From the NCBI RefSeq assembly GCF_026571515.1, contig NW_026854772.1:186001-250000 (forward strand): a stretch of DNA of 64,000 nucleotides, read 5' to 3'. This DNA is from Ruditapes philippinarum (lineage: Eukaryota). The translations under genes were made by a program, and so were the position numbers. Position 1 is the first letter of the stretch. Each line of letters opens with the position of its first letter. The notes beneath the pieces were generated by a model. It was not told the DNA's origin. It was given only the letters and a program-made list of their open reading frames with translations, and did not search any database. Below are positions 27,705 to 54,437 of this stretch, in pieces.

Positions 27705-27785
27705 CTACAGACGTGCCATGTTACATCATGTAATGTGCGTGAACTCCGTGCATGTCACGTGCTATCGAGTAGTATATATAGTCTG
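27705..27785 (+). promoter_or_regulatory. Promoter of Gly/Tyr-rich gene copy 1 (E-box + TATA)
   Basis: CACGTG at 27756-27761 and TATATATA at 27773-27780. The downstream TCTGCCGAAAA is conserved in copies 2 and 3. Confidence 0.6.
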
Positions 27786-27861: not shown

Positions 27862-29946
27862 ATGAAATTCTTCGCCATTGCACTTTTATTGGTTGCACTC
27901 TGTGTTGCCAACAGTGAAGGTAAGAGTCTTTTCGAATTACATGTGTATTAAAAAAAATCACTTTTTGACTATATATTTTATAGGGTATAGAGCTGTGTTT
28001 AGGGTGTCTCAAATGTGCCGAATAATTTTTATTGTGATATTAAAATACTGTCCATTACAACTCTAAATATCTTAAATGGACTTGTATATCTTTTAATCTG
28101 GAGAAAACCATGCATTATTTTAGGGAATATTTCAAAACGTTACGGACGGAATAGTAAAAAGTGCAGACCATGATCAGATGTCACAGATATGTCGGTCGAT
28201 CTTGGTCTGCACTGGTTGCAACGGTAGATTCAGATACTACCGATATGACAGGACTCGAAATTGATATACCATTTCATGAAGGTCTGGGTCACTAACTTGT
28301 GTGCAAAATTTTAGATCTTTCGCTTATTCGTTTTTTTTAAAAATTTCAGAATAGTTATTTTTATTATGAAAGATGTTTTCCAAATATGAAAAGCGTATCT
28401 AAACGCTTTAACATAATATTGAGCTTAGATACGAGCAAAAGTATGCTGTTGTTGTTTTTTTTAAATTTTATTCAGGGTATTTTTTTGTTATATTTTTGTA
28501 ATATCTTTTCATTTTAAGTATCCCAGTTCATCATTGTAAGAAGTTCAAATTTTATGTCTTTAGGCTTATTAGTATACCTTTGTGGGGTTATTATAATTTG
28601 TATTTGTTAAAGTTTAATGAAAACTAAACTCACTTAAATTAGCAATGGAATATTTTTGATTTGGAACGTTTTATTCGGTTATTTACAATATTCTGGAAAG
28701 GTAAGGCAACAATACTGAACTTCAAAAGTGTATAAGTTGTACAGCTTTTGACAAAGAATAAATTTTCTTCGATTTTTCTTATTATTATTTGTTGTTGTTG
28801 TTGTTGTTTTATTTGGTAGTTTCAATTATAACTTTTTGTTGTTGTAAGGGTTATACTAAAGTAATTACTGATAATCTTACGCGTATTTTATGAAAAATAA
28901 ACATACTTAAATTTGTACTACATGATCAAATATTAAATTGACACGTAAATATGTTGGCCACTGACCTTTAAACATGTAAAAACTTACCAAAACTATTTAT
29001 GCATGATATTATATTATGTTTATTTAATTAAGTCAGTTGGACATAATATAAATTATATATTTGATAAAAATGTGTAATATCGGTTCACATAATGTTCCAT
29101 GAAACCGATCAAAGTGTTATAACGGCAATTTTATTTAGACTTTATTCAACATGTTCAAGTCCCTTGTAGGCCCCTGGTAGATTTAAAATTAAGATGCCAT
29201 AACATTATTCATACTATACGTAATGAAAATGAAAAAGTGAAAAGCATTGGAACGCTTTTCACTAAAATTGGGCTTTGAAAAGCACAAAATACGATTTTCT
29301 TATATATTTCATATTTCATATCAACTTTTGCATATCTGTCTGTTTTAAGTACCCCAGCTGATCTGTGTAAGAAAGTTGAAATGTAACGTCTTTATACTTT
29401 TGAACCTCAGTTGATTTCCTTTTTTCTTTATATGAAAAGACGATTTATATCAGCTCCTTTAAACACTTGATTATTTCATATTATACTACATTCATAGTGA
29501 TTGACGTGACGTTTGGTTATCACATGACGTAAGTGACGTCCTTACGGTGTACGTCTTAATAACAGAATTCCAGTTTTGTGACACATAAGCCGCGTTTTTC
29601 TCTTTTGCTTGACTTAAAAAACAAATTATGATGAAGTTGTTTCTCTTTCTTTTTGTAAGCGTTCTGGAAAAAGAGATGCAAGCACTGTAAGTGGGGATAC
29701 GGCGGTGGTTACGGCGGCGGATACGGAGGTGGATATGGCGGCGGATACGGCGGTGGTTACGGCGGAGGTTACGGTGGTGGATACGGTGCAGGTTACGGCG
29801 GCGGATACGGGGCTGGATACGGCGGCGGATACGGGGCTGGATACGGCGGCGGATACGGCGGCGGGTATGGCGGCGGTTACGGTGGCGGTTATGGCGGTGG
29901 TTACGGTGGCGGTTACGGCGGTAGACATGGCTGGAAAAAATACTAA
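27862..29946 (+). CDS. Secreted Gly/Tyr-rich protein, copy 1 (114 aa; KRMP/shematrin-like architecture)
   Basis: Exon 27862-27919 encodes MKFFAIALLLVALCVANSE (GTAAGA donor, phase 1). Exon 29660-29946 encodes AFWKKRCKHCKWGY-[G(G/A)GY]x18-GGRHGWKKY*. AATAAA at ~30055. Confidence 0.9.
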
Positions 29947-32437
29947 TCAAAGAAGGACTATTGAATTCCTTGCCTTAAGTCAATATGCTACCGGAATACA
30001 GACACGCTCGCCTCAACATGTTTGATTTGCTGTACACATCTCAAATTTTTTTGTAATAAAAACTTTTTTATTCAAGCATCAAATATGTTTCATTGTCGTT
30101 TTCTGTGGGCTCCATCCATTTTTTTAAAGTCTATTACCTTCTACGTAATCAGTATTCATAAAAACAAGTAGAAATGACCTCGTCATCATCACAATTATTT
30201 CTTATTCATAGAGTCACACATCATTATTTCTTTGTATGACGGGGTTGAAGCGTAGGGGAACACTGGCTTATCAATCTTAACGTCGAATAATTAGTGCAGT
30301 GTATATAAGCATAAATATGTAATATAGTAATAGCATAGCGACAAGACTTTTATTATTAAGAAATATCATAGCTTGGTCCCGAGAACATTTTCTGTAGAGA
30401 AAGCCCAAGTTGGATATACTATAACTGTTTTATCGCATGATAAACAGAATTAAGAATTTTGATTAGACATAAAACTTTGAGTATATTTTTTTCGCATAAC
30501 AGTCTTGTTGCTATACTATGCTATAACAATTACTTTTTGCATCATGATGAGGTGAATATCCGAGTCTATGGACCTAGATAATACTGGAACCACCAAACTA
30601 GAAAACAAGTCAGAGTGCAAGGAACATAACAATAATGTCATTCACGATTGGTTTCTAATAATAGAAGGCTAAATTTAGTGTCACGCTAAATGATGTTGTT
30701 TGTTGATAATAATATTACCCAGAGTCGGGGGAAATATCACTTGCTGTTGTGCGCATCACCCTTTTTTCTTTCTTGAAACAAACAAGATATATATTATCAT
30801 TTATGTTAGCGCTTTCCCCTTTTCAATGCCACTTTTTATATACTCGCAAAGCAATGCCATTTAAAACACTTAAGTGTGTCTTTCCAAATAAACATTAACT
30901 TTCCCAAGTTTCCTACAACAACTTACTGTTGTTTGCCATTGCCAAAGAGGTAAGCAATTATTACGCATTATTTTACTTGGGGATCATTTCATGGAATGCC
31001 ATTGTGTCATATTGAAAGTTCCTTGATAACCGCCGTATAAACACATCTTCGGATGTGTCTAAATTCTAATTTATATCACCATTTTCATGTTTGAAAGTTG
31101 AATTCTGCTATTTAAGTCAGTGTTAAGGGTGCAGACTGTAGTTTGCACTTTCCAGTACCTTTCATGAATAGACACAATCAAACCGAGCCTGAAGCCCTTT
31201 CAATTTTGCCGTTTGGGGCGTTCTTTAGGGACTCATTTTTTATATTTTGTGGGTTCAAAAGTTGCGTTCTTTGAAGAAATTCAAAAATAGGCCTACTCCT
31301 TGTAATTTTCAGTGGGGATCACATATCATTTAGATACACACCATAAAGTCCATTCTTATTGACCCCATAGAAGTAAACATATTTGGGTACATAACTTGTC
31401 AGGGAAGATCATCCTTATCGACATGACTTTGAGTAAATTCCCTTAGAAGCATATACACCATTTTTTATCAAAGGAATTTACTCTTGTCGACAACATTATG
31501 CTTCAAAAATATTACTTACCTTAGAAACACATACGCCATTGATATTTATCAGGGACGATCGATAATTATTATCAACAAAAGGTAAGTTTCCTTATAGATG
31601 CATGCATGCATGCCTTTTGTAATTACCAGGGAGACCATTCTTATCCACTTGACTTTGCTCTTCTCAGGAGCATACACGCCATCTCTAATTTTATCCATTT
31701 TTTAATCCAAAATTAACTTCTTTTAGAATATGCACGCCATTTAAATAATAAAACCGTTTACCTTAGAATTATGCACGTTATTTGCAATTATTAGGGGAGA
31801 CCATCTAACCCTAACCGTATCGAACTAATTTTGCTCTCAAGAGCTACTTTCCTTCGAATTATCAGGAACAATATTGCTTTCAAGAATTACTTATCTTTGA
31901 AGCTGTGACGTCATCCATTCCCTATATTGCATCGGACTCCTGGCAACATCATTTTTATCTTTACTTTAAAAAAATATTTCAACAGACTGTAAGGCATACA
32001 AAAAATATACAACAATAACGAAATTAAGGAGTCCCTCAGGGACATTGCAAACAACGAAAACTACTTAGTTACAAGTTGAGCGATTGCAATCTCATGAACT
32101 ACAAAATAATAACACGAAAAAGAAGAGTAAACGGAATTATTGAATCAAGTATCATACATGAGACTTAGTCTTGTGTTAAAGCAATATATTGCCGATTATT
32201 TCCCGTAATACAGAACAATGCACCATGCGCACTGGCTTATACAAATGTACTTTTTTCAAATACGAGTGTCCTACCAGAAACATCATAAAAATCTAGTTTA
32301 ACATCGAATATTTAATAACCAATTCAACAGTTAATATAACTGATTACATAAAATATAATGTCCGTGAACAATAAACTATCCATTGGTGTAGATTTTAATG
32401 TGCTACACCAATTACTGTTACACTATATAGACGAATT

Positions 32438-32625
32438 TAGTTTTTACACCATGTACACATTTATTTTAGTTCGATTGTGTTGGAAGCTATAAGCTTATTG
32501 AAACACTCTCGAATCCGTTCCTGGAACCAACCAGTACTAAGCAATGGAGGTGAAGTTTCTTACTCAAGAAACAACAGCTTGCCCCTGACAGGGTTTGAAC
32601 CCACGCGGTCAGCAATCCTTAGATT
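32438..32625 (-). mobile_element. SINE insertion specific to unit A
   Basis: Same family as 60-210. Flanked by direct repeat TAGACGAATT (32428-32437, 32626-32635). Absent at ~52480. Confidence 0.75.
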
Positions 32626-34042
32626 TAGACGAATTACAATTTATTTAAAATTGGATTTGACCAAATGACGGTTTGATATGCCAAAACACACCTCCGGATA
32701 AAACCTGGAGCAGACGGATATAAAATTTGCACTAAGTCTTAATTTCCCACAATACGGTGCGTTACACCACACACGGAGCAAATGGTTTGGGTTATGGTCA
32801 TAACTGATACATTGTCCGGCCGGAGGCCGGTCTGTTTTCAGTTTTATTTCCTGTAAAATATACAGGGAAGAACTGAATATAAGAAGAGTTTTCATTGGTC
32901 GTTTTAAAATTACAAAATAAAATCTGGGAATCTCATTGGCCATTCTAAAATTAAACGTAAAGGATAGTTCTTTTCATTCTAAGACAGTTCTAAACTAAAA
33001 TGTAAAGGATATGTCTAAGATAAACTGTACATTTAAGTTCTGTTTAATAATACTTCTTGCATTCAGATCTCATTACATTTTCTACTGAACAGTTTATTTT
33101 ACGTAAGAACTTACAGAGTTTATTTTACACAAGATCTGAGTGTGAAATTTTGTCATTAATAACGAGAATAATCAGAACTTATCAGGTAATGTTCAATAAG
33201 TGTTTAATTTATTATATGATTATTGATGTGTTCAATTGATGTAATGTTTATAAATTTTATATATGTTTGCATAGTAATCAAATATTTATAAAAAAATATT
33301 GCTTTACCGACTGCCTAGATGTTAGTGTTAGATTATGAGTTCACATTTCGAAACACGATATGTTTGTTTAGAAACACATACATCTTAAAGTGTTCCATGT
33401 GTCACGATTAATAACCCTATAAGAAATTATTATGCCATTGTTATGCAAGCTATGCTAACATTTCTATATGACTTTGCATGAAAAACTAAGAACTAGCACA
33501 ATTGTGCAAGTTAACCAGTTTTACTCGGGCCGAGTTTCTTTTTTTTTTTTAAAGATACTTCTTGTTTCTATCAGTGATTCTTTTATAAACCCGGTATTCT
33601 TTAAAACTTGCAAGTATTTAAACACACTGAATAAACAAACATATTAAATTTGAATTAAATTGAAACAATATCAACAAGAAACAGTAGTAAATATCATTGA
33701 AATAAAAGCAGAAACTTTGTCTCTTGGACAGCATTGTTTAATGTTCATGGCTGGGCAAATACAAAATTTATTGCATTGTGCATGAAATGCAAATGTACTG
33801 AACCCTTACCCTGATGGAGCCGGAAGTTACTAGTATTTTCCACAAGTTTAGACCTAGGTCAATCTGCATGCCCGTACAGTCTTATCAGGTTCTATGTTGC
33901 TTCCTGACTAATTATAAGAAATTTTAACAATTTAAAAACAATATTTTTTATTTTAAGAATTATCAGTAGTTGCTCATTATAATAAGTTATGCATATATAA
34001 ACATACGAATTTTTAATCTTTAATCTATAAACTCTTAAGATA

Positions 34043-34093
<51 letters not shown>
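34043..34093. repeat. (TAAA)n microsatellite
   Basis: About 12 perfect units. Confidence 0.95.
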
Positions 34094-34094
<1 letters not shown>

Positions 34095-34504
34095 ACTAAC
34101 TTCCATGATATATGTGATATCTGTACATCCAATTCAAACTGTTTTGAGATTTTTTTAAACAAACACTAAAAATATACTTCAGCAGTTTAGTATTTCCATG
34201 TCTTTCAAATATCCTAAGAAATAACGTATTTGATAATGAAAAGTAATTGTGTCTGTTTTATGAATAGTTTAAAGAAATTGTTTTAAAAAGGCAAACAACA
34301 ACATAAACATTTAACATGAGAACATTAAAGAACACCTGCATTATCTCAATATGCACCAATTAACTTTAAAATATGAATTAAAAATATCTTTTTACTCAAA
34401 ATTCAGATCCATGATCGATCTACAATATTGAATCTTTGTTATATATTTGAAAGAAAATGCCTATAAATCGTACTTCAAACGAAAAACGTACGGCGTTACG
34501 ATAC

Positions 34505-34570
34505 ATTGTGCACGTGAATCAAGTGCGGGTTATGTTCAGTATTGTTTCTTTAACGGTATAAATACTCTGC
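34505..34570 (+). promoter_or_regulatory. Promoter of Gly/Tyr-rich gene copy 2 (paired E-boxes + TATA)
   Basis: CACGTG at 34511-34516, CAAGTG at 34520-34525 and TATAAATA at 34557-34564. Confidence 0.65.
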
Positions 34571-34647
34571 CGAAAAAGAAAATTGTCAGATCACCACCAT
34601 TGTCTTTCGAAGTCGTCAGCTGTTCTGATAGAAAATAGTTCGCCACA

Positions 34648-35002
34648 ATGAAATTCTACGCCATTGCTCTTTTACTGGTTGTACTCTGTGTTGCCAACAG
34701 TGAAGGTAAGTGAAGTTTATTTAAACTAAAAATGAAAAGCTTGTTTTTACTTCATCTTAGATGGCTGATCAGATGACCTTTTATCTTCCTTTTCATTTTT
34801 TTGACAAGAAAATACTCATACATATGTAAACATTTTTTTTGTATTTTAATATTTAATGTATATTTCAAACAGATATTAATTTATCTTATCGTCCTTAAAA
34901 CAGTAACAAAATTATTTCTAATAAATATAAATTATAACTATAATATAGAAAATATTTGTTTGTTTGTGTGTTAGATGAAATTTTATTTCATCGAGTGAGC
35001 TT

Positions 35003-35035
<33 letters not shown>

Positions 35036-36383
35036 AACAGTATTTTCACGGGTGGCGTAGCCACGAGTGAGAATACTGTTTTAAAGTTCACGAGATGAAA
35101 TAAAATTACACATTACACAACAAACAAACAGATTTTCTTTTTATTCTATGCTTAAAACAAGTTTTTAAAAATGAAACTTCCTCAATATTAACTTTAACAT
35201 TAAAATCTGTTTCCCCCACTGGTAGCCTCATTTTAGTCGACTTACATGGAAAATAAGTTCGACAATCAACGTTAAATGTCGATGATATTATTTATTTTAT
35301 TGCCGAAACATGAACGATCCTTTATTTTAAAAATTGAAACAAACAATTTTAGTAGAAGAAAAAGTCACACCTATCGATGTTATTTCCGTTACTTACGGCA
35401 AATTTATATTACTATAGACAAGGCTACGAGTAATATAAGCGACCGCCATTTTTAAAAGTAAGGAAAATAATTGTGTTTGATTCAGAGGGATATCTTTTGG
35501 ATTTGTTAATCATACATCTTTCATAACAAAGGAAACTTATTGGAGGATTGTGTATTTTTCAGACGGTAAAAATGAAACAAAAACTTTAGAGACGATAATT
35601 GGTGATTGGTAATTTGTATGAATTTAAGTTTGAAATTTAGGTAATTCATCTACTACAAATTTGCTTTTCTCTAAACAGCCCTGACAGTGTCAGAAATGTT
35701 GGTAAATAATTGAGGTGCCACATGGGGAAGATCTTAAAAAAGTAATCTCGTCTTTGAAAAGTGTGAAATTATATTTTGATAATTTTCACTGTGAAATTAT
35801 CAAATACAATTTTCACGGATAAATCAGTAATCCACTCAAAGGCATAAAATATATATATATGACTAATAGAATGGTTACCTAGCAAACATATGGATATGCA
35901 TATCTTTTATGTAAATTTACATAATAAAATGTTATTATCGTAGGTTTAGTGTTTAACAAATTATCGAAAATCTGGAGCTTTGATTTATTTTCATGAATTT
36001 GTCATTTGCGATTATTCATTATTTCTCTCTGAACACGATTTTTAATGAATTATTTTTCACTTATAATTTCAGCATTCTGGAAAAAGAAATGCAAAAAATG
36101 TAAGTGGGGATACGGCGGTGGTGGAGGCGGCGGAGGAGGATATGGGGGCGGCGGCGGTGGCGGCTATGGTGGTGGTTACGGCGGCGGCTATGGCGGCGGT
36201 TACGGAGGCGGTGCTGGGGGCGGCTACGGAGGCGGAGCAGGGGGCGGCTACGGCGCAGGATATGGAGGCGGCTATGGTGCCGGTTATGGTGGTGGCTACG
36301 GAGGCGGGGCTGGTGGCGGCTACGGAGGCGGAGCTGGAGGCGGCTACGGAGGTGGTCGTGGGCATGGCTGGAAAAAATACTAA
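34648..36383 (+). CDS. Secreted Gly/Tyr-rich protein, copy 2 (122 aa)
   Basis: Exon 34648-34705 (MKFYAIALLLVVLCVANSE, GTAAGT donor) and exon 36073-36383 (TTTCAG acceptor; AFWKKKCKKCKWGY-Gly/Tyr repeats-GGGRGHGWKKY*). AATAAA at ~36482. Confidence 0.92.
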
Positions 36384-37924
36384 ATTTCCTGATGATTTCA
36401 CTAAAGGAATATATTATTTTTTTCGACGACCTACCGATATAACATGACCGACAGTCAACACTTGTTTATATGTAGCACATTAATAAACACTGTTAGCATT
36501 TAAAATGTTATTTTGTATTTTTGTTTTATTTAATTTTTGTAATTTTGTTGGCCAAACGCTGATAATCGGAACACTTTTGAAAAGCCCAGTGTAGCCAAAG
36601 TATGGTGGAAAATGATAAAAAGTAGCCATTACTCTACATGCATCAAAACATCAAAAACATTTCCCTATGATGTTAATTCTTAATAGTTTGAATTGAAAAA
36701 GGAACAGAAATGAAATCTATAACTGAGCTAACAACCTCTTATTTTAGACTAACGCGTTTACATTAACATACTAGGACAGAGCAATAGGTAAAATTTCGAA
36801 ATAATGCTTCCCTGAAAATAAGTGCACTTGTTTATAAAAAGGATAATAGAAAATCAAAGATCCTATTTTATTGATTGCGGCAGAACGTGTTTTTTGATAA
36901 AACAACGGAAGCATGCCGCGGTCTGTATAAGACCCTCCTCCGCGTATACAGTACATGTATATGCATACTAGACCTGACACCCCCTTTACAGCTCACTCAA
37001 TAAACTCACCTTACTTCAGAAAGAAAGTAAGCGATAGTGAAACATTCGACCGATGCGCAGGAGAGTAACTAAACGTCTTTGGTACATTATTGTAAATTCT
37101 CATGTTTTTTTTATAAAACAAAAGAAGCTAAAAACTATCCTACGAGTCCTTGTTACCGTAAACAAATGCCACGTGACATGTAACTAGATTAAAAAATTAC
37201 AAGTACAACAACCACAATTGCAAACATCAAAACGTAATTATAAGGTTGTTAGAATAAACTATAGAAATGAATGTTTCGAACCTTTTTAAATCTTATTGGC
37301 TAACCTGACAAAGCAAACAAATAGAAAATGTTGAAAAGATTGAAAATTAAAGCATTTCGGCTAGTGAAACATCGCAGAACATAAAAATGTAAGCATCAAT
37401 ACTTTAAGATGGATAATCACATGGCATTTGTTTACTACATGTAATATTACTGGGTTACCACTAATTGCTGCGCGGTATTTGTTTGTTTTATTTATATCAA
37501 TTTCAACATCAATATTTGAATAGCAAACAGGCCCCAATGATACTATTGGTCTTGCATTTTTCCCGGCGTGTTTGCAGAAAATGTGTCATAATATCAACGT
37601 ATATTTTCATCAAAATATTTCCGCATTGAAAAACAATTATGTACCATTGAAATCGACAGATATTTGCCTGTAACATTGAAATTTAAAAGAATATAACGAA
37701 AATTAGCAAATACATTTTAAATCATCGGAGCGGCCATGAGTGGCGGTAAGCAAATGCCACGTGATAAACCAGTCTGGTAAAAACATGTATACATGAACTA
37801 CATCAATATGATTTCATCTTTTGCAAGGTCTTACTCACTGAATACATATTTGCCATAATTTAAAAACCTATAAGAATCCATGATAGCCGTAGACCACTCA
37901 CACTCACCTTAAAATCATCGCTTA

Positions 37925-40323
37925 TGCAGGCGTCACACTGTCCCGAATTTGGCATCAGATGGACACACGAATAAGGAAATGTTCAAATTCGGATCTGATC
38001 GTAATAACATCGTGCCATTCGTGAGGGCATCTTTTGCCATCGTATGATCCCCGGCTGAATATTACAAGCTCCGGCAGCAACTTCGTGAGCGGTTCCAAAA
38101 TCTTTGGCATGCCAAAAAAATCGCCCGAAGACATTGCGGAGGTTCATTTTCGTGTTGAAATCGTATGTCAATTTTGCCCTTCGTAACGCCGTCGTGAAGA
38201 CATCGTGTCAAATCGTGTAGTCTTCGTCTTTTCTTCGTGTGATCATCGGTGCAATCTGGCATTTTTAGCCTCAAGAAGACAATACGAAGGTAACACGAAG
38301 ATTCCCGATTGTCTTTAGAAGGGTACACGACTACGTGAAGCCCCCGCAATACCGTCGTGTCGCCATCGTATTTTGGTACGATGTCATCGAGATGGGACCA
38401 CGATGAGGACGAAGAAGGCAATTTTTAGTGGCTCAAGCGTTGTTTATGTTCATGTTTATCATGGTGGACATATAAACGGCTAGACCATCTTCCTCATCTG
38501 TCACTCTTGCATATTTCTACAGAGACATCAAAAGCTTCCATTATTTGCAATTAATTTACAATCATTTTCAGTTTATTTCCTGCAGAATTACATGCTTTGA
38601 TGATGAGTCAACCGAGAAAAAGAAGGCAGCAGCATTACTACTTTAAAGACACCTTAGAAAACATGATGAGGCCCACAGGCCCACCTTGGGTGGCATGATA
38701 AAGTTTTATCAAATATGATAAACAAGATCAACAAGGAAAGGCAGCGTTCAATGAACGCAATTCCAACACGACCCAGCAACAAGAACCAAGTAACACAAGA
38801 GGACCCCATAAAAATCGGACAGGGCGCAAGGCAGAGCACGGATAGGCTTATCACTTAAATGATACATAAGACGAAATAATGGTAAACGACAAGAAAATCA
38901 AAGAAAACAAATAAATGATTGATTTATTAAATAAATAAAACTAGGGGTAAAAGGGAAAATACTTACCGTTGACGAGAAAACAACAAGGGACACCGACAAA
39001 AGTATCCTCAAAACAGTATGAAATAACAAAGACATACATCTGAGGAACAAAGAAGGGCGCCGCCTTGGACCGGTCAGCAGCATAAGTACTTCTTGGGAGT
39101 TTAAACCGGTTAATGGTGCACCAAGCCTCACGCTTAGCCCGCCATGTTCCTATAAACGAGACGGTGTAAAATAAAATGAATCCCCGCCAAGTAAATTTAT
39201 AACAGTTGTTATGGTTTCAAAAGGTAAAATAAGTAAAACACCGAAATGATCATGAAGATACATATAGAGGAATACCCATATGACCATAACAAAAGTACTC
39301 AATATTTTAAAGGAAGACAGAGTAACAAAAAATCACCTAAAAGGGCCAGACGAAGCAAGACAGAAGATGAACATTAAGGCAATTCAGTCCCGTCAGATGT
39401 AATCAAAAGAGGAAAGGACCATCTGTAAAAGTGTTGAACACTAAGCATGCGGTATATCTAAAAAAGTAGGGTCAAAACCTCTTTTGGTTAAACGTTTAAT
39501 AATTTTAGTAAAGGCAACAGAAAAATTACAATGACCAAAGATCTTGCGAAGTTTGTAAATAACATTTCCATTGAAATCATTTTTGAATTACTACTGAATT
39601 TTGAGATTAAATCAAAGTTACGATTGTAAAATATTTACGGAATTTATAATAGCGGTAGCCCTGTTTGAGAAGCTTGCTAGTAATGAAAATATTTTGCTTG
39701 TTAAAATCCTTCACGTTGCTAAAAGCTCTAGATAATCTAATTTTCTGAGATACATATACCCCGTCAGATGTTGCATGCGGTACGTGTCCATCAGAATGTG
39801 GATAGTTTACTATACCATAATCAAAGTCATCACTTTTATCATAGATTTTTGTTTGAATAGAAGCGTTTTTGATAGTAATATGAAGAGCCAAAATAAAGTT
39901 TAAACGTAGTTTAATTAGTTCCCAATACTATCTGCAACTGAAATTTGCCGTGGTTGGCCGTGGGTTGTATACCACTCGAAGGTGAAGGTCACTTGACGCC
40001 TTCGTAACCACGTACGAAGGCATCGTACTCAAAATACGACGTCGTGTACCTATCCTGTGACCTTCGCGTGTCCTGCTGGTAAACGTCTTGGTACAAAATT
40101 GCATCTTTGAGATGACATCGTGTGTGTATCGGATGCCATCGCGTGACCTTCGGTAGGAATCGTATGTGGCTCGGATGCGATCGCGTGACCTTCTGTAGGA
40201 ATCGTACTTGTTTCGGCTGTTGAGAGACTGTCGACCAATTTCGGGGCTATCTTCGCACGAAATTAAAAATTCCATATTCGTATGACCATCTGGTGTCAAT
40301 TTCGGGACAGTGTGACGCCTGCA
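37925..40323. mobile_element. PIF/Harbinger-type non-autonomous transposon, unit A only
   Basis: About 38-bp TIRs beginning TGCAGGCGTCACACTGTCCCGAA. TTA TSD at 37922-37924 and 40324-40326. The empty site ATCGC-TTA-TCGAAATC is at ~55906-55921. Confidence 0.92.
38655..39900 (-). mobile_element. Degenerate Penelope-like element fragment (RT C-terminus + 3' region) nested in the Harbinger element
   Basis: TKIYDKSDDFDYGIVNYP...GVYVSQ.IR..R...KLLKQGY, then (frameshifted) GNVIYKLRKI...TACLVFN. No GIY-YIG domain follows. Confidence 0.75.
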
Positions 40324-42609: not shown

Positions 42610-42650
42610 TTTATTGGTTTGACGTCATATGCGGTCAGAATATAAAGTTC
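42610..42650 (+). promoter_or_regulatory. GPCR copy A promoter: inverted CCAAT, full CRE and TATA
   Basis: ATTGG at ~42613, TGACGTCA at 42620-42627 and TATAAA at 42641. All are conserved at ~58140-58175. Confidence 0.65.
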
Positions 42651-42730
42651 ACGACTGCCACCATTTTTCTATCACAGCGCTGTGACATTATCAAGCTTAA
42701 CAACTGGTAAAAAAGTTTCGAGGTGTGAAA

Positions 42731-43843
42731 ATGTTCATCAATACAACACCGATAACTAATATTACAACTGAAATAAATCCAGACAACCTGAGGACCTACA
42801 TGAACACAACTGAGGATAATCCATTACAAGGGAACAATAGTAACTTCTATGGTGGAAACGACACGAAAACACCTTGTAAAGTTTTCAACTCAACATCATA
42901 TGGAGACAGCAACGCTGGGACGTTCGAGGCAAAAATAATCGAAATACTCACATACTTTCCTATAACTATTTGGATAGGCTCATTGCCGAATATTCTTATC
43001 ATTTGCATTTTGATGAAAAAAAGAAATCGTAAATTTTCAACAGCGGTTTTCTTGATGTCACTTGCTGCTGCAGATTTGGCAAACGGATGTGCCACATTGA
43101 TGTACTGGCTGCAAGACAATCGCTTCATTGAGGAATCTTACTCTAAATTTGACTGTGTTTTAAGAAACTATATCGGGATAGTTTTTATAATGGTATCGAA
43201 CTGGTTATTGGCTGTTATTTCAGTTGAAAGATGTATCTGTGTGGTATATCCGTTTGATGTGAAGAAAATATGTTCAGTCACTGTATCAAAGATTGCAGTT
43301 ATAATGGTTTGGGCAGCAGCGTTTATCGTTGAGGCTATACTGTTCTGGTCAAATTTCAAAATCGAGTACAACACCGACATACAATACGATTATGAAGACT
43401 GCTTTGCAGAGGAATCTGACGATATGGCTCCCAAAGTGTGCAACGTTGACTTCATCAGTGAATGGCATGATCAATTTTACAGCATTATTCAACCAAGCGT
43501 AAACGTTTTTCTGCCATATTCTATAATAATGATTTTTTCATGTATCATTATCTATAACCTGAAGAAAGAAGAAATACAAAAAAGAAAAACGGCAACAGTT
43601 GTTAACGCGATTCTGACTTTGAATGTCATTTTCTTGGTAACAAACTTGCCAGAGATGGTGGTTGAATTTTTACGGCTTTCGGGTTATGCAGTCAATGAAG
43701 TTGTAGAAACGGTTGCTTTCAGGCTGCGAGAATTAAACTTTATTGCTAATTTCTTTGTTTATTTTCTTAGTGGCTCTAGGTATAAGACTGAAGTAAAAGA
43801 TCTTTTTGCACGGGCATGGGATAAAACCAACAATTTTGACTAG
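42731..43843 (+). CDS. Intronless class A (rhodopsin-like) orphan GPCR, copy A, peptide/FMRFamide-receptor-like
   Basis: Seven hydrophobic segments, N-glycosylation sequons in the N-terminus, LAAAD in TM2, Cys at the top of TM3, SVERC (DRY), LP in TM5 and TM6, and NFFVY (NPxxY variant) followed by SGSRYK. First ATG is at 42731; the ORF track starts at a GTG. Confidence 0.93.
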   Translation: MFINTTPITNITTEINPDNLRTYMNTTEDNPLQGNNSNFYGGNDTKTPCKVFNSTSYGDSNAGTFEAKIIEILTYFPITIWIGSLPNILIICILMKKRNRKFSTAVFLMSLAAADLANGCATLMYWLQDNRFIEESYSKFDCVLRNYIGIVFIMVSNWLLAVISVERCICVVYPFDVKKICSVTVSKIAVIMVWAAAFIVEAILFWSNFKIEYNTDIQYDYEDCFAEESDDMAPKVCNVDFISEWHDQFYSIIQPSVNVFLPYSIIMIFSCIIIYNLKKEEIQKRKTATVVNAILTLNVIFLVTNLPEMVVEFLRLSGYAVNEVVETVAFRLRELNFIANFFVYFLSGSRYKTEVKDLFARAWDKTNNFD

Positions 43844-45070
43844 ATCTACAGATTTATTATATTTTTATTTTCATTTTGTTTCACAAAGGACAACAATTTA
43901 TGGTTTAATTGTTAGTTATTTAAAAATTGTCATTTTGTTTTAACCATGTTTAAGATCTTAATTTTCTCTCTTTCTACAAAAGGCAATTACATCGTAATTT
44001 GACATTAGGCAATTCTAACAAGCAATCAAAATTTATTAAATCAATGTTTTAAACAAAAGCTTTTCGACTTTTGTTATATTTAAGACTTTATTTCATCTTA
44101 AAACTCTTTTTGCAAAAACTATGTTTTGCTGCCTTTTCATTATTGTAAGACATTTGGAAGATATTTGATATGTTTCTGTTCACCTGTGGCCGTGCTTGCG
44201 TTCGTGCTACTGTGTGTTGTGAGTGTGTGTATGTGTGGGCGAGAGATATTGTTGTTGTATTTGTTGTTAGTTTTCTTTTGGCATATATACGTTGTATTGT
44301 TGTGGTTGTTGTTGTTGGCTTGTTGCTTTTGTTTTATATATATGTATATCATAACTACACTGTACAAAGTCTTCTAGAATTAAGATAGTGTGAAGATGAA
44401 CAAAAAGATATCATCAATGTTTAAACATACCGATTATAGAATCAACATGTTTATTTCATGGTACGAAATAAAACGTTTTGTTAAGAAATACATGTATTTC
44501 AATTGTGACCGTGACCCTTTAATATATTTCTCAAAATGTTATTTCGATTATGAATGTATTAAATCCTGAAAAAAAGTTAAATAATGCAAGGAGGATTTTT
44601 CAAACTGCCAAAGTATATAATTTGAACTTTTTAAACATATGACAGCAAGACAAGACAACGTTCACTTAACGCGAATCTTGACATAATCTAGCAACATCGG
44701 CGAGCCATCAACAGGGCATGGAACCAAAATTGGGACAGGGCATAAGGGCGGAGAAAAGACAAGAGGGACATACCAATAACATTTACATTTTTAAATATTT
44801 ACATCATCAGTTTAAAAAACAGACTTATGTATTAACTGCCAATATTGCTTAAACTTAAATTGGTTAATTAGGGTTGTATTTATTTGTGGGTTCTATTTTT
44901 GTGTATTTTAATGTGTGATTTTTAATGTATGTTAGTAGTGAATTTTGTTTGAATACATTTTATGATGTTGTTCTAAGTTTAACGTAATCATATTGTTTAA
45001 ACTAACATCTACACTGACTTTGTAAGCTTACGCATATGAAAGTGTATGTTTTGAGGTTCTGTCTCTAATA

Positions 45071-48600: not shown

Positions 48601-48829
48601 AACTGATATCCCAAACAATGCAGGCGTCATAAACTCTGATATCCTTTAGAAATTTCACTTCATTTAATTTCAACCGTTGTTCTCTCGTTAGTGGTACATA
48701 CATTCTTTTACGTGAGGGAACATTAGCCGCTTTTATTGAATAACGCTAACATGTCACATAGAATGTTCCATGATAATCGCCATATGAACACAGCAGCGGA
48801 TGCTTCAGAATTCCAAATTTTAATATTTT

Positions 48830-49885: not shown

Positions 49886-52800
49886 ATTGCCAGGCATATT
49901 TTTCAATCATAAATTAACCGAAATTGACTTAATTTAACTTGAATGTAAGAGAAATACATCAGTTACCAATATTAATCTGTTTTTGTTAACATCTGGAGTT
50001 ACGTGATAGAACTGCTTTCAATCGGGATTCCGTATTAACTTTGAGCAGGGTCTTTAAAATCTATTTGAAAGACCCTGCTCCGAGATTATTATAGATAATC
50101 ATCGAGCAGTTCCAATTGGAGACGTAACTATGTTGAATTGCGATCTTCACACATACGACGAATTCGTCATACATGTGAAATATGTATACATGTACGCATT
50201 CCTCACCAATGTGTGAAAATGCATTATGAAATCCATTTGTATTTTGCCCACTAAAATTATCTGATGCTTGTTATCAATTCTTATATCTTTTCCTTATGAA
50301 TAACAATTCTTAAAGATATAATACGCTTAAATTTAATACTTTAAAATACTGATGATTGCTATACTTTACAGTCTCTTTTTAAAGCTGCTTGCTTCCAGAT
50401 CAGCCAAAATATTTACAAAAAAATACAAGAAAAATGTACTAAGACGTCAGAAAAGTAAAAATTTCTAGATTTAAGTATTTATTTACATGGTATGTCCGAT
50501 TTGTAATTGTTTTTTTTACCATTTATAACCATATTTCTACTGCGTTAGTAACGCAGTAAATGCTATTTTGAATATTTTGACAACATATTTTGGTAATTTT
50601 CGTGGGTTTTGAGTGCTGTTTGTATTGTGTTAAATGCTCCCTTTCTGCTCACTTCTCAATATTTTACTTTTAAACGCACTTTCAAAATGTTCATAAAATT
50701 AAGCATTAAGCTTTAAATGTAAAATAAACGTCTTTTTGTACACAGAGACAAGATGCGTTACATTTTAAAGTCTCCTTTTGTTATTTGTCTGCTTTTTTCT
50801 ATAGAAATTGTTTGATATTGATCGAATAAAGCGAGAGAAAAACCATTCTAAGCTTTTATTCGGCTAAGGTCATTCTGCCAAAAAGAAGTAAGATACCATC
50901 AAATTATTTCCTTAATGCCTAATTCAAAAGCATTTGTAATTATAAAGGTTATAAATATGTCAGTGAAAATTGTCTTTTGACGTCTTGAAAGTGATATGTA
51001 GGCTTTATAACCCCAGATCTCCTTGGAAAATACCATGTTATTTAGTTTCGTCCGTTGCTTTCTTGTAAAGGTCACACGCATTATTTTACTTGGGGATAAT
51101 TTCATGGAATGGCACTCATGTGTCATATTGAAAGTTCCTTGATAACCGCCGTATAAACACATATTCGGATGTTTCGTAATTCTAAATTATATCACCATTT
51201 TCATGTTTGAAAGTTGAATTCTGCTATTTAAGCCGGTGCTAAGGGTGCAGACTGTAGTTTGCACTTTCCAGTACCTTTCATGAATAGACACAATCAAACC
51301 GAGCCTCAAGCCCTTTCAATTTTGCCGTTTGGGGCGTTCTTTAGGGACTCATTTTTTATATTTTGTGGGTTCAAGAGTTGAGTTCTTTGAAGACATTTAA
51401 AAAAGGCCTACTCCTTGTAATTATCAGTGGGGATCAATAACATTTAGATACACACCATTAAGTCCATTCTTAATGACCTCATAGAAATATATTTGTACAT
51501 AACTTGTCAGGGAAGATCATCCTTATCGACATGAGTAAATTCTCTTAGAATCATATACACCATTTGTTTTTTCAAGGGAATTACTCTTGTCGACAACATT
51601 ATACATCAAAAATATTACTTCCCTTAGAAACAAATACGCCATTGATATTTATCAGGGACGATAAATAATTATTATCAACAAAAGGTAAGTTTCCTTACAG
51701 AAGCATACATAGGCTACATGCCTTTTGTAATTACCAGGGATACCATTCTTATCTACTTTACTTTGCTCTTAAGACTTTCTTTTCTCAGGATCATACACGC
51801 CATCTCTAATTTTATCCACATATCAACATGTTTTAAACCTTAATTAAATTCTTTAAGAAGTATGCACGCCATTAAAATAATAAAACCGTTTACTTAGAAT
51901 TATGCACGTTATTTGCAATTATTAGGGGAGACCATCTAACCCCAACCGTATCGAACTAATTTTGCTCTCAAGTTCTACTTTCCTTCGAATTATCAGGAAC
52001 AATATTGCTTTCAAGAATTACTAATCTTTGAAGCTGTGACGTCATCCATTCTCCTTTATTGCATCGGACTCCTGGCAAAATTTTATTTTTTATCTTTATT
52101 TAAAAAAAAAATTTTCAAAAAGACTGGGAAGGCAACAAAAAAAACAACTCGGAAAAACGAAATTTTCGGGGGTCCCTCAGGGGCCCTCGGGAAAAAAACG
52201 AAAAATACTTAGCTACAAATTGAGCGACTTCAATATATTGCCGATCATTTCCGGTAATACAGAACAATGCATCATGCGCACTGGCAAATGTACTTTTTTC
52301 AAAAACGAGTGTCCTACCAGCAATATCATAAGAATCTAGTTTTACATCGAATATTTAATAACCAATTCAACAGTTAATTTAACTGATTACATGAAATATA
52401 ATGCTCGGCAACAATCAAGTTTTGATTGGTGTTACACAGATTTTAGCCGTTACACCAACGGCTATTACACAATATATACGGATAAATTACACTTTATTTT
52501 AAATTGGATTTGACCAAATGACGGTTTGATATGCCAAAACACACCTCCCGGTAAAACCTTGAGCAGACTGATATAAAATTTGCACTAAGTCTTAATCTCC
52601 CACAATAAGGTGCGTTACACCACGGTATGGGTTATGGACATAACTTACACATTTACACATTTAAGAAATTGTTTAAAAAAGGCAAACAACAACATAAAAA
52701 TGGCCTCAAAATTTAATTTATCATGAGAACATTTAAGAACACCTGCATTATCTCAATATGCACTAATTAACTTTAAAATATAAATAAAAAAATATCTTTT

Positions 52801-53052
52801 CACTCAAAATTCAGATCTATGATCGATCTACAATATTGAATCTTTGTTAAATATTTGAAAGAAGATGTTAATAAATCGTACTTCAAACGAAAAACATACG
52901 GCGTTGCGATTCATTGTGCAAGTGAATCACGTGTAGGTTATGTTCGGCATTGTTTCTTTAAAGGTATAAATACTCTGCCAAAAAGGAAAATTGTCAGATC
53001 ACCACCATTGTCTTTCGAAGTCGTCTGTTCTGAAAGAAAATAGTTCGCCACA

Positions 53053-54437
53053 ATGAAATTCTACGCCATTGCTCTTGGTTGTACTCTGTGTTGCCAACAG
53101 TGAAGGTAAGTGAAGTTTATTTAGACGCTTGAAATGAAACGCTTGTTTTCACTTCATATTAGATGGCTGATCAGATGTACTTTCCTTTTTCTTTTTTTCA
53201 TGTCACTTTTGACAAGAAAATACTCTTACATATGTAAACATTTTTTTGAATATTCAATGTACATTTAAAACAGTTATTAATTTATCTTATCGTAACAAAA
53301 TTATTTCTAATAAATATAATCTAAACTATAATATAGAAAATATTTGTTTGTTTGTGTGTTAGATGAAATTTTATTACGAATTAGGAAAACATGGAATTGG
53401 TGAAAGGCTGTCTTACGAACGCTGGGTTGTTTACTTTTTCTTCGGGCTGATGACTGTCATCGCTTTTCAAGTTTTGATATTTCATTAGGCCGTTATTACC
53501 CGTAGGATACTTAATTATGCCCAAATGTCATCAAGGGCAGTTTTGCATATGGAAGGAAGTGTATTTTTCAGACTATAAAAATGAAACAAAAAATTTAGAG
53601 ACGATATTTCGTAATATGAATGAATAGTGTTTGAAATTTAATATATTTATCAATTCCAGATTTACTTCTCTTAACAGCCCTGTCAATTTCAGTATTGTCA
53701 GAAAAAATATAATTGAGGTACTACATGGGGAACATCTTAAAAACAGTAGTCTCGTCATTGAAAAGTCTGAAATTATATTTTGATACTTTTCACTGTGAAA
53801 TTATCAAATACAATTTTCACGGATAAATCAATAATCAAAAGCATTAAATAAAGAGGATCTATCACATTTTAATTCCTTGAATTGGATATATATATGTGTG
53901 TGTGAATCAAAGAATGGTTACCTAGCAAAAACATGTTTATGCATATTTGTAATGTAAATTTTAACAAGTAGGGAACAAAAATAAAACGTATAATCGTAGG
54001 TTTAGTTTTTAACCCATTATCGAAAATCTGGAGCTTTAATTTATTTTCACATATTTGTCATTTTCGATAATTCATTATTTCTCTCTGGACACGGGTTTTA
54101 ATGAATTATTTTTCACTTATAATTTCAGCATTCTGAAAAAAGAAATGCAAAAAATGTAAGTGGGGATACGGCGGTGGTGGAGGCGGCGGAGGAGGAGGAG
54201 GAGGATATGGGGACGGCGGCAGTGGCGGATATGGTTGTGGTTACGGCGGCGGCTACGGCGGGGGTTATGGCGGTGGATACGGAGGCAGAGCTGGGGGCGG
54301 CTACGGCGCAGGATATGGAGGCGGCTATGGTGGAGGTTATGGCGGTGGCTACGGAGGCGGGACTGGGGGCGGTTACTGAGGCGGAGCTGGGGGCGGCTAC
54401 GGAGGTGGTCATGGGCATGGCTGTAAGAAATACTTAA
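53053..54437 (+). pseudogene. Gly/Tyr-rich secreted protein copy 3, pseudogene
   Basis: A 5-bp deletion in the signal-peptide exon gives a stop at 53101-53103. Also TGG>TGA at 54134-54136, GGA>TGA at 54377-54379, and a damaged WKKY* end (CKKYL). Confidence 0.92.

What the first reader, a model, noticed from the sequence alone, without database searches (positions are those of the whole stretch)
27862..54437. Tandem family of small secreted CxxC-(GGGY)n-WKKY proteins with a miniature KRMP/shematrin-like design
Seen: three two-exon genes encode a signal peptide, a cationic aromatic head (FWKK[RK]CK[HK]CKW), about 75-85 aa of Gly/Tyr repeats and a basic terminal HGWKKY. The head and tail are nearly invariant between copies 1 and 2, while the introns show no evident alignment and the repeat is remodelled. 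Known: pearl-oyster KRMPs have a Lys/Trp/Cys domain, a Gly/Tyr domain and a basic ...KY end. Shematrins end in RKKKY-type motifs. Spider ctenidins are GGGY-rich cationic antimicrobial peptides. Inference: a possibly undescribed family of tyrosinase/DOPA cross-linked structural proteins (shell, periostracum or ligament) or of Gly-rich antimicrobial peptides, with only two Cys in the head.
Basis: partly seen in the sequence, partly recalled or inferred. Interest (0 to 1): 0.8.

Follow-up and report, generated by a model that had tools for sequence, protein, structure and literature searches.

The report
Clam glycine-tyrosine secreted protein family
The Manila clam carries a small, unannotated and apparently clam-only family of expressed genes for tiny secreted proteins that are about 60% glycine and 15-21% tyrosine with short, positively charged ends. 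They most likely build shell or shell-skin material, but which tissue makes them is still unknown.

Summary
The window holds two intact two-exon genes (A 27862-29946, B 34648-36383). The third copy (psiC, 53053-54445) is a pseudogene with a 5-bp deletion in exon 1, two in-frame TGA codons, a Trp-to-Cys change in the tail and a lost stop codon.

Each intact gene encodes a signal peptide, the head FWKK[RK]CK[HK]CKW, 75-83 residues made only of Gly, Tyr and Ala, and the tail HGWKKY. The mature protein is about 8.9 kDa with pI 9.4-9.6 and has no acidic residue.

The genome is Ruditapes philippinarum. It holds six loci in all: A, B and E look intact, psiC and D are broken, and one is a truncated fragment.

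An RNA-Seq contig at depth 2571 joins exon 1 to exon 2 of gene B exactly at the predicted GT..AG intron. The intact copies carry 0-1 foreign residues in the core despite about 24% DNA divergence, so composition is under purifying selection.

Pfam, two word searches, a profile search of 1.84 billion proteins and a literature motif search found no relative beyond low complexity. A control showed that true members would score 91-104 bits.

The design matches KRMP and shematrin proteins, but family membership fails (2 Cys instead of 6, no detectable homology). Function is unresolved: a cross-linkable structural matrix protein (about 0.5) against a glycine-rich antimicrobial peptide (about 0.22).

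The scan had earlier noted a different glycine-rich family, with an 8-Cys tail, on other DNA of this genome.

The parts
27770..27781 (+). Gene A TATA-like box (tagTATATATAg), about 85 nt upstream of the ATG
   Evidence: Read directly. The promoter and 5'UTR block is conserved among all five copies.
27862..27919 (+). Gene A exon 1 coding part: MKFFAIALLLVALCVANSE plus the first base of an Ala codon (signal peptide); donor G|GTAAGA
27920..29659 (+). Gene A intron (1740 nt, phase 1, GT..AG), not alignable to the introns of B, D or E
29660..29946 (+). Gene A exon 2 coding part: (A)FWKKRCKHCKW + 75-aa (GGGY/GAGY)n core + GGRHGWKKY + TAA
   Evidence: A 12-nt tandem repeat of 18.9 copies lies here.
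30055..30060 (+). Gene A candidate polyadenylation signal AATAAA
   Evidence: Read directly. No RNA was laid on gene A.
34557..34564 (+). Gene B TATA box (TATAAATA)
   Evidence: It is conserved in B, psiC, D and E.
34648..34705 (+). Gene B exon 1 coding part: MKFYAIALLLVVLCVANSE plus 1 base (signal peptide)
   Evidence: RNA contigs cover 34605/34607-34705.
34706..36072 (+). Gene B intron (1367 nt, phase 1, GT..AG), removed in RNA
   Evidence: An X4 RNA-Seq contig of depth 2571 skips 1367 nt with GT..AG ends (cut +2 gives 34705|36073).
36073..36383 (+). Gene B exon 2 coding part: (A)FWKKKCKKCKW + 83-aa Gly/Tyr/Ala core + RGHGWKKY + TAA
   Evidence: RNA contigs cover 36071-36118, 36162-36439 and 36209-36383.
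36384..36504 (+). Gene B 3'UTR with AATAAA at 36482-36487; the RNA contig ends at 36504
   Evidence: record 8 (36355-36504, 1 mismatch).
53053..53105 (+). Pseudogene psiC exon 1 remnant: a 5-bp deletion relative to B gives a frameshift and a TGA after 16 codons
54129..54445 (+). Pseudogene psiC exon 2 remnant: TGG>TGA in the head (54134-54136), a second in-frame TGA in the repeat, Trp>Cys in the tail, stop TAA>TTA, and 7 non-Gly/Tyr/Ala residues in the core
31003..44247 (+). Segmental duplication, copy 1, carrying gene B and GPCR gene 1 (42725-43843)
   Evidence: families D2-D14, 86-98% identity..
51119..59768 (+). Segmental duplication, copy 2, carrying psiC and GPCR gene 2 (58251-59369, intact)

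Best explanation
These are real, expressed, lineage-restricted Manila clam genes for roughly 9-kDa secreted proteins.

Most likely they are precursors of an extracellular structural material: shell organic framework, periostracum, ligament or byssus.

Inferred mechanism:
- The signal peptide, encoded by exon 1, directs secretion.
- The uncharged (GGGY)n core (59-66% Gly, 15-21% Tyr across the mature protein) acts as a flexible low-complexity domain.
- That domain self-associates or binds chitin, and is made insoluble by oxidation of its regularly spaced tyrosines (tyrosinase to DOPA/quinone, or peroxidase to dityrosine).
- The two short cationic aromatic caps (FWKKxCKxCKW and HGWKKY) supply Lys, Cys and Trp/Tyr. 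These could form quinone-Lys, cysteinyl-DOPA or disulfide cross-links and anchor the protein to acidic matrix or mineral.

Shown: gene structure, splicing, high transcript depth, and purifying selection on the composition and on the caps.
Inferred: secretion (no SignalP was run), cross-linking chemistry, and the tissue and material.
For: - Gene models and translations.
- A spliced RNA contig of depth 2571 sits exactly on the predicted intron. Further contigs reach the poly(A) region, in runs from three studies.
- 20 runs from 10 studies hold part of exon 2 and the 3'UTR.
- Between old paralogs only the promoter and exons are conserved; the introns are unalignable.
- Intact copies have 0-1 residues other than Gly, Tyr or Ala in a 75-83-codon core at about 24% DNA divergence. 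A neutral simulation gives about 7 such residues at only 5% divergence, and the pseudogene has 7.
- Composition is 59-66% Gly and 15-21% Tyr, with 8-9 Lys+Arg, no Asp or Glu, and pI 9.4-9.6.
- Literature analogues: KRMPs are about 10 kDa, with a Lys/Trp lead domain, a Gly/Tyr cross-linking domain and a basic ...KY end, and are very highly expressed. The Gly/Tyr region of KRMP-3 binds chitin (PMC3896809; PMC4498902; PMC3191542).
- Periostracin of Mytilus is basic, with 55% Gly, 10% Tyr and 2.2% DOPA, and its sequence was undetermined as of that 2013 paper (PMC3821031).
- A review of aquatic invertebrate AMPs uses the term 'glycine-rich' only for crustacean peptides (PMC11767717).
Against: - The tissue of expression is unknown. 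Run identities are coded, and one 2026 RNA run (X23) showed no exon 2 reads.
- No proteomic or DOPA evidence exists.
- There is no detectable homology to KRMP, shematrin or any other protein.
- The size, charge and Gly/Tyr content fit spider glycine-rich antimicrobial peptides equally well. Acanthoscurrins are about 10 kDa, 73% Gly, and end in GGGKYK (PMC8610171).
- Signal peptide cleavage was judged by eye only.
Confidence: 0.5

Rival explanations
1. The genes encode glycine-rich cationic antimicrobial peptides of the acanthoscurrin/ctenidin type. The secreted 9-kDa Gly/Tyr polypeptide, with Trp/Lys-rich ends, would act on microbial envelopes. It would be made in haemocytes or in mucosal epithelia such as gill and mantle.
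For: - The protein is about 8.9 kDa, with net charge +8 to +9, no acidic residues, and Trp/Lys-rich termini.
- Acanthoscurrins are about 10 kDa and 73% Gly, have GGGY runs and a GGGKYK end, and are active against E. coli and Candida (PMC8610171).
- Birth-and-death tandem evolution with pseudogenes is common for immune effectors.
- Expression is very high in some RNA runs and absent in others of the same study.
Against: - The one AMP review consulted uses the term 'glycine-rich' only for crustacean peptides (PMC11767717).
- Tyr at 15-21% in a strict 4-residue period is more typical of cross-linked structural low-complexity domains (PMC4498902).
- There is no homology to any known AMP.
- The tissue is unknown.
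Confidence: 0.22
2. The genes encode another kind of extracellular Gly/Tyr material not related to the shell. Examples are an egg-envelope or vitelline-coat precursor, or a mucus or adhesive component, hardened by tyrosine oxidation. Schistosome eggshell precursors and sandcastle-worm cement proteins are analogues (cited from general knowledge, not tested here).
For: - The composition and secretion signal are as above.
- Presence varies from sample to sample within one study: X4 holds the sequence, while X21 and X22 hold next to none of its words. That would fit sex- or stage-specific expression.
Against: - There is no direct evidence.
- It is equally untested as the shell reading, and bivalve precedents for this composition come from mantle products.
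Confidence: 0.15
3. This is not a functional protein family. A transcribed GC-rich microsatellite-like repeat would happen to lie in an open frame.
For: - All three forward frames of the repeat are open.
- Two to three of the six loci are decayed.
Against: - A conserved TATA box and 5'UTR, a signal-peptide exon, a phase-1 intron, and head, tail and stop codon are kept across paralogs whose introns no longer align.
- The splicing is precise and the transcript depth high.
- Intact copies have 0-1 foreign residues against about 7 expected even at 5% neutral divergence, and the pseudogene shows what decay looks like.
Confidence: 0.03

Closest known systems
KRMP (lysine-rich matrix proteins) of pearl oysters (Pinctada)
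   Same: - About 10 kDa and basic (pI 9.5-9.8 against 9.4-9.6 here).
- Signal peptide, then a Lys/Trp/Cys-containing basic lead domain, then a Gly/Tyr low-complexity domain, then a short basic ...KY C-terminus.
- Multigene family with very high mRNA levels (PMC3896809; PMC4498902).
   Different: - The head is 11 aa with 2 Cys (CxxC), against a 43-aa basic region with six conserved Cys (PMC4498902; PMC3191542).
- The Gly/Tyr domain is 75-83 aa, against 10-40 aa.
- No sequence similarity is detectable by profile or word search.
- The host is a heterodont clam without a calcitic prismatic layer (general knowledge).
Shematrins (Pinctada prismatic-layer framework proteins)
   Same: - Gly/Tyr-rich GnY repeats.
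- A basic C-terminal signature ending in KY (RKKKY, RRKKY, RRRKY, PRKKY, against WKKY here; PMC3896809).
   Different: - Shematrins are larger multi-domain Gly-rich proteins, and a hydrophobic residue usually follows the GnY repeat.
- They have no CxxC/Trp head.
- No homology was detected.
Periostracin (Mytilus edulis periostracum precursor, Waite et al. 1979)
   Same: Basic, with 55% Gly and 10% Tyr, DOPA-containing, and a tyrosinase-tanned precursor (PMC3821031). The clam proteins are 59-66% Gly, 15-21% Tyr and basic.
   Different: - Periostracin is 20 kDa and these proteins are about 9 kDa.
- The periostracin sequence was still undetermined as of that 2013 paper, so homology cannot be tested.
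- DOPA and the tissue were not tested here.
Acanthoscurrins and ctenidins (spider haemocyte glycine-rich antimicrobial peptides)
   Same: About 10 kDa, cationic and Gly-dominated, with GGGY runs near the ends and a basic aromatic C-terminus (GGGKYK) (PMC8610171).
   Different: - The spider peptides are 73% Gly with many Leu and few Tyr, and have no Cys or Trp head.
- They come from an unrelated lineage, and no homology was detected.
8-Cys-tailed glycine-rich family of the same genome (contig C7464; RefSeq XP_060601559.1, annotated 'keratin, type I cytoskeletal 9-like' or 'holotricin-3-like')
   Same: - Best non-self match of the family profile within the genome.
- Same gene plan: a signal-peptide exon, then a phase-1 intron one codon before an N-terminal Phe.
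- Similar head (F-x-[RK]-K-C...W..C), 4-residue GGG[YF] periodicity, and a ...KKY/...KYY C-terminus.
   Different: - That family carries a roughly 35-aa cationic 8-Cys C-terminal domain that is absent here.
- Its head is CxxxxC, not CxxC, and Phe is as common as Tyr.
- BLASTP between the two families is not significant (E 3.4), so common ancestry is only a lead.

Membership tests
KRMP | N-terminal signal peptide | tested here: inconclusive
   Exon 1 encodes MKF[FY]AIALLLV[AV]LCVANSE(A): a Lys n-region, a 14-residue hydrophobic core, and small residues at -3 and -1. No SignalP-type predictor was available.
KRMP | Lys-rich (Lys/Trp) basic region directly after the signal peptide, about 43 aa in KRMP-3 | tested here: inconclusive
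   A Lys/Trp/Cys-rich segment follows the signal peptide, but it is only 11 aa, against 43 aa (PMC4498902).
KRMP | Six conserved cysteines in the basic region | tested here: not met
   The whole mature protein has only two Cys (CxxC). The six-Cys rule is from PMC3191542.
KRMP | Gly/Tyr-rich domain before the C-terminus, 10-40 aa | tested here: inconclusive
   A Gly/Tyr domain is present but is 75-83 aa long. The 10-40 aa range is from PMC3896809.
KRMP | Short basic C-terminal motif ending in Y (RKYKY, RPKKY, RRKY) | tested here: met
   HGWKKY followed by a stop is invariant in A, B, D and E.
KRMP | Detectable sequence homology of the basic region | tested here: not met
   In the profile search of 1.84e9 proteins, no listed best-matching stretch starts before profile position 8, so none covers the head. 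The best hit scores 56 bits, against 91-104 bits for true members. KRMP sequences themselves could not be fetched for a direct alignment.
KRMP | Expression in the mantle edge or outer fold and presence in the prismatic insoluble matrix | not testable with these tools
   Run and tissue identities are coded.
Shematrin | C-terminal RKKKY, RRKKY, RRRKY, IRRKK or PRKKY signature | tested here: inconclusive
   The end is WKKY. It shares the KKY ending but is not one of the listed signatures (PMC3896809).
Shematrin | Large Gly-rich framework protein with GnY repeats followed by a hydrophobic residue | tested here: not met
   The mature protein is 94-102 aa. The repeats are GGGY or GAGY, followed by Gly.
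Periostracin-type periostracum precursor | Basic protein with about 55% Gly and 10% Tyr | tested here: met
   59-66% Gly, 15-21% Tyr, pI 9.4-9.6. The reference composition is from PMC3821031.
Periostracin-type periostracum precursor | 20 kDa, DOPA-containing, extracted from periostracum | not testable with these tools
   The predicted mass is about 8.9 kDa. DOPA and localisation need wet-lab work. No periostracin sequence was known as of that 2013 paper (PMC3821031).
Glycine-rich AMPs (acanthoscurrin/ctenidin type) | About 10 kDa cationic peptide with more than 70% Gly | tested here: inconclusive
   About 8.9 kDa and cationic, with 59-66% Gly and far more Tyr than acanthoscurrin (PMC8610171).
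Glycine-rich AMPs (acanthoscurrin/ctenidin type) | Haemocyte expression and measured antimicrobial activity | not testable with these tools
   Needs tissue-resolved RNA and MIC assays.

The most novel reading that the evidence does not exclude
These genes are the first sequenced representatives of the 'periostracin' class: basic DOPA-tanned precursors with about 60% Gly and abundant Tyr. That class had not been sequenced as of a 2013 paper (PMC3821031), although periostracin was described in 1979. In this reading the CxxC/Lys/Trp cap is a built-in redox and cross-link handle, playing in one chain the role that separate thiol-rich proteins play in mussel adhesion. The family shares an origin with the 8-Cys-tailed glycine-rich family on contig C7464, which would define a clam-specific superfamily of capped (GGG-aromatic)n proteins.
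Probability: 0.15. Interest if true: 0.6.

Novelty: new variant of a known kind. Interest (0 to 1): 0.38.

Why it matters
Repetitive low-complexity Gly/Tyr proteins are major framework components of bivalve shells. So far they have been characterised almost only in pearl oysters and mussels.

This is an unannotated, highly transcribed family in a commercially important heterodont clam. It has a minimal architecture: an 11-aa CxxC cap, (GGGY)n, and a 6-aa cap. That gives a simple natural model for three questions:
- how terminal Lys/Cys/Trp handles and spaced tyrosines build tanned extracellular materials;
- whether the KRMP/shematrin design arose convergently;
- what periostracin-type precursors look like at the sequence level.

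It also shows that standard annotation and trypsin-based shell proteomics can miss such genes, because the 75-83-aa core has no Lys or Arg.

If the protein is instead antimicrobial, none of the papers consulted here describes a glycine-rich AMP in a bivalve.

Tried and rejected
- **Pfam scan** of both exon 2 products: no family.
- **Word-index protein searches.** The whole exon 2 product of A gave only low-complexity hits such as a moth 'holotricin-3-like' protein. Residues 1-40 of copy E, which are head-weighted, gave nothing.
- **Profile search** of the four exon 2 products against 1.84e9 representatives. It returned 75 low-complexity hits and none covered the head.
- **Local control.** True members would score 91-104 bits in the profile search, and 45-51 bits in the head-region search for the closer copies B, D and E. 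The blanks are therefore meaningful. One caveat is that 50% clustering could hide a member under a Gly/Tyr-rich representative.
- **Full-text search** for FWKKRCK, FWKKKCK and HGWKKY: no paper.
- **Searches for a described Manila clam glycine-rich protein or AMP:** nothing relevant.
- **BLASTP of gene A's product against the 8-Cys-tail family:** not significant. Homology is therefore not claimed.
- **Joined protein.** The spliced exon 1 + exon 2 protein was never submitted to any search. The exons were searched apart. This also means I could not look up whether RefSeq holds the exact full-length protein.
- **Reads.** They could be laid on one stretch only, so gene A's transcription was not tested.
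- **Structure prediction** was not attempted, because the core is about 60% Gly low complexity and a model would be meaningless.
- **Extra 5' letters.** The 68 extra letters at the 5' end of the X4 contig do not match the window and are not preceded by an AG. I treat them as a contig chimera or allele break, unexplained.

Full report
**What is in the sequence**

The window is contig C3259:186001-250000 of a 1.41 Gb assembly. A protein of another glycine-rich family in this assembly is 99% identical to RefSeq XP_060601559.1 of Ruditapes philippinarum. The organism is therefore the Manila clam, and its RefSeq proteins are in the protein collections I searched.

Three loci with the described design lie on the + strand.

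- **Gene A.** A TATA-like box lies at about 27770-27781. The ATG is at 27862. Exon 1 ends at 27919 (…AAC AGT GAA G|GTAAGA). The intron is 27920-29659 and ends …TTTTTGTAAG|. The exon 2 coding part is 29660-29946.
- **Gene B.** The TATA box is at 34557-34564. The ATG is at 34648. Exon 1 ends at 34705, the intron is 34706-36072, and the exon 2 coding part is 36073-36383. An AATAAA lies at 36482-36487.

In both genes exon 1 encodes only the signal-peptide-like MKF[FY]AIALLLV[AV]LCVANSE, and a phase-1 intron splits the next (Ala) codon. Exon 2 then encodes three parts:
- the head FWKKRCKHCKW (A) or FWKKKCKKCKW (B);
- a core of 75 aa (A) or 83 aa (B) made only of Gly, Tyr and Ala in a 4-residue period;
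- the tail GGRHGWKKY (A) or RGHGWKKY (B), followed by TAA.

The exon 2 products are 94 and 102 aa and about 8.9 kDa, with pI 9.4-9.6. They are 59-66% Gly and 15-21% Tyr, with 8-9 Lys+Arg and no Asp or Glu.

**The third copy is a pseudogene**

The copy at 53053-54445 is not a gene. Its exon 1 has lost 5 bp, which shifts the frame to a TGA after 16 codons. Its exon 2 has four lesions:
- the head Trp codon is TGA;
- a second in-frame TGA lies in the repeat;
- the tail Trp is changed to Cys;
- the stop codon is TTA.

It also carries 7 residues that are not Gly, Tyr or Ala in the core. It arose with a segmental duplication: about 31.0-44.2 kb is repeated at about 51.1-59.8 kb with 86-98% identity. 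The duplication also copied an intron-less rhodopsin-type GPCR gene (42725-43843 and 58251-59369). Both GPCR copies are intact.

**Census in the genome**

The head DNA pattern occurs six times and the reversed control never. Searches with exon 1 DNA, a tail pattern and the family profile agree with this.

| Locus | Place | State |
|---|---|---|
| A | window | intact |
| B | window | intact |
| psiC | window | broken |
| D | C3259:371.8-372.7 kb | exon 2 intact (102 aa), exon 1 carries several 1-bp indels and no longer encodes a signal peptide |
| E | C3259:392.45-394.64 kb | intact |
| fragment | C13324 | truncated, with a third, TGA-interrupted copy of the GPCR 4 kb downstream |

In summary, three loci look functional, two are decayed and one is a fragment.

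**Is it a real, expressed, constrained gene?**

*Transcription.* I laid four runs on 34000-36900.
- In X4, a library recorded as RNA-Seq, one contig of depth 2571 covers 34605-34703 and continues at 36071-36118. It skips 1367 nt with GT..AG ends (cut +2 gives 34705|36073), which is exactly the predicted intron of gene B.
- In X3, one contig ends exactly at 34705 and another covers 36162-36439 with 3 mismatches.
- In X1, contigs cover 36209-36383 and 36355-36504, ending about 17 nt after the AATAAA.
- B and E are only about 80% identical over exon 2 and the 3'UTR, so these near-identical contigs come from B.
- A 2026 raw-read RNA run (X23) had no reads on exon 2, so expression depends on the sample.
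- Twenty runs from ten studies hold part of exon 2 and the 3'UTR. Their tissues are hidden by the coding of run ids.

*Constraint.*
- A aligns to B, D and E only over the proximal promoter with exon 1 (about 156 nt, 81-82%) and over exon 2 (about 265 nt, 76-77%). The introns do not align.
- B and psiC align throughout.
- The head is 9/11 identical, and the tail HGWKKY is invariant in A, B, D and E.
- The cores of A and B have no residue other than Gly, Tyr or Ala, and E has one (Ser). A simulation of neutral substitutions in B's core gives about 7 foreign residues at only 5% divergence and about 32 at 24%. The pseudogene has 7.

Composition, caps, splice phase and stop codon are therefore under purifying selection.

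**Relatives**

- Pfam finds nothing.
- The word-index search with A's exon 2 product returned only low-complexity matches. A head-weighted search with residues 1-40 of copy E returned nothing relevant.
- A profile of the four exon 2 products against 1.84 billion representatives gave 75 hits, the best at 56 bits. All lie in the Gly/Tyr part, and no listed best stretch starts before profile position 8.
- In a local control, real members score 91-104 bits with that profile. Copies B, D and E score 45-51 bits in the 40-residue search, and the more divergent copy A scores 32 bits. A member would therefore have stood out.
- The family thus seems absent from public protein sets, including the clam's own RefSeq annotation. 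One caveat is that 50% clustering could hide it under a Gly/Tyr-rich representative. I was also instructed not to search the joined precursor, so I could not look it up by exact sequence.
- The head and tail strings occur in no paper of the library.

The best non-self match within the genome is the 8-Cys-tailed glycine-rich family on contig C7464, which this scan noted earlier on other DNA. The two families share:
- a signal-peptide exon followed by a phase-1 intron one codon before an N-terminal Phe;
- a head of the form F-x-[RK]-K-C…W…C;
- GGG[YF] periodicity;
- a …KKY or …KYY end.

BLASTP between them is not significant. I record this as a lead, not as homology.

**Comparison with what is known**

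- KRMPs are roughly 10-kDa basic proteins. They have a Lys/Trp lead domain right after the signal peptide, a Gly/Tyr cross-linking domain of 10-40 aa, and an RKYKY/RPKKY/RRKY end. Shematrins end in RKKKY-type signatures (PMC3896809).
- KRMP-3 is 101 aa, with a 43-aa basic region and a 38-aa Gly/Tyr region. The Gly/Tyr region binds chitin, and the basic region modulates CaCO3 growth (PMC4498902).
- The KRMP basic region has six conserved Cys (PMC3191542).

The clam proteins fail that last feature, with only two Cys as CxxC. Their head is four times shorter, their Gly/Tyr domain is two to eight times longer than the 10-40 aa range, and they show no detectable homology. They work like a KRMP on paper but are not members.

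Two other analogues fit by composition.
- Periostracin is basic and 20 kDa, with 55% Gly, 10% Tyr and 2.2% DOPA. Its sequence was undetermined as of a 2013 paper (PMC3821031). It is matched in composition but not in size.
- Spider acanthoscurrins are about 10 kDa and 73% Gly, end in GGGKYK, and are active against E. coli and Candida (PMC8610171). They are an equally good analogue for size and charge.
- A review of aquatic invertebrate AMPs uses the term 'glycine-rich' only for crustacean peptides (PMC11767717).

**Most likely function**

I favour a secreted structural precursor, at about 0.5. In that reading the uncharged (GGGY)n core is a self-associating or chitin-binding domain that tyrosine oxidation makes insoluble. 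The cationic Lys/Cys/Trp caps act as cross-link and anchoring handles.

Four things support this:
- the high and regularly spaced Tyr content;
- the KRMP/shematrin-like end motifs;
- the very high transcript depth;
- the bivalve precedents.

All the chemistry is inference. The AMP reading (about 0.22) and another hardened extracellular material such as egg envelope or adhesive (about 0.15) remain open, because the expressing tissue could not be determined. A non-functional repeat is very unlikely (about 0.03).

**Limits**

- No SignalP was run.
- Reads were laid on gene B only.
- Run tissues are coded.
- No bivalve genome or TSA search was available.
- The spliced precursor was not joined for any search.

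**Verdict**

This is a genuine, expressed, selectively maintained and so far undescribed small gene family. It is a new variant of the known kind 'basic Gly/Tyr low-complexity secreted proteins of bivalves'. Interest is moderate, at 0.38. Such fast-evolving repetitive secretome genes are expected in molluscs, but the minimal CxxC-capped architecture, the missing annotation and the possible link to periostracin-type precursors make it worth an expression and proteomics follow-up.

Noticed in passing
window 42725-43843 and 58251-59369 (+); also G000 C13324:20415-21518: An intron-less rhodopsin-family GPCR gene (372 aa, Pfam 7tm_1, weak Srsx/Srx chemoreceptor similarity) was duplicated together with the Gly/Tyr gene. 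The two window copies are 92% identical and both open. The third copy, on C13324, has one TGA. In the window duplicate the GPCR survived while the Gly/Tyr gene decayed.
   Followed up: partly
window 31003-44247 vs 51119-59768: A segmental duplication of about 13 kb. The offset shrinks from 20.1 to 15.5 kb, so there are indels between the copies. Identity is 86-98% in the flanks but only 79-87% across the Gly/Tyr gene.
   Followed up: partly
G000 C7464:289-331 kb (loci L012-L017): The 8-Cys-tailed glycine-rich family (RefSeq 'keratin type I cytoskeletal 9-like' or 'holotricin-3-like') shares several features with the family studied here. These are the signal-exon and phase-1 intron plan, an N-terminal F-x-[RK]-K-C head, GGG[YF] periodicity and a ...KKY/...KYY end. 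It may be a clam-specific superfamily, but this is not statistically supported (BLASTP E 3.4).
   Followed up: partly
window 34605 (5' end of the X4 RNA contig): The spliced X4 contig carries 68 further 5' letters (…GGAAGAAATTAAATACTTAGTATATGGTGG) that do not match the window. The break is not at an AG acceptor. This could be a contig chimera, an allele or an upstream sequence; it is unexplained. All RNA contigs read T at 34618, where the assembly has A and the paralogs have T.
   Followed up: no
window 34873-35939 (intron of gene B): RNA contigs and raw reads pile up on short pieces of the intron, with loose ends on both sides (for example 35461-35521 and 35746-35851). This is the signature of dispersed repeats transcribed elsewhere, not of intron retention.
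   Followed up: no
window 7273-8484 (-): A 403-aa ORF with a reverse transcriptase domain (RVT_1, E 1e-32): a retroelement fragment upstream of the family.
   Followed up: partly
window 19195-20077: A 449-bp unit in two tandem copies (84% match), of unknown nature.
   Followed up: no
window 29682-29691, 36100-36109, 54156-54165: The codons for Cys-Lys-Trp in the head spell TGTAAGTGGG, which contains a consensus-like splice donor (GTAAGT) inside exon 2. It is conserved in every copy. The RNA contig reads straight through it in gene B, so it is not used there.
   Followed up: partly
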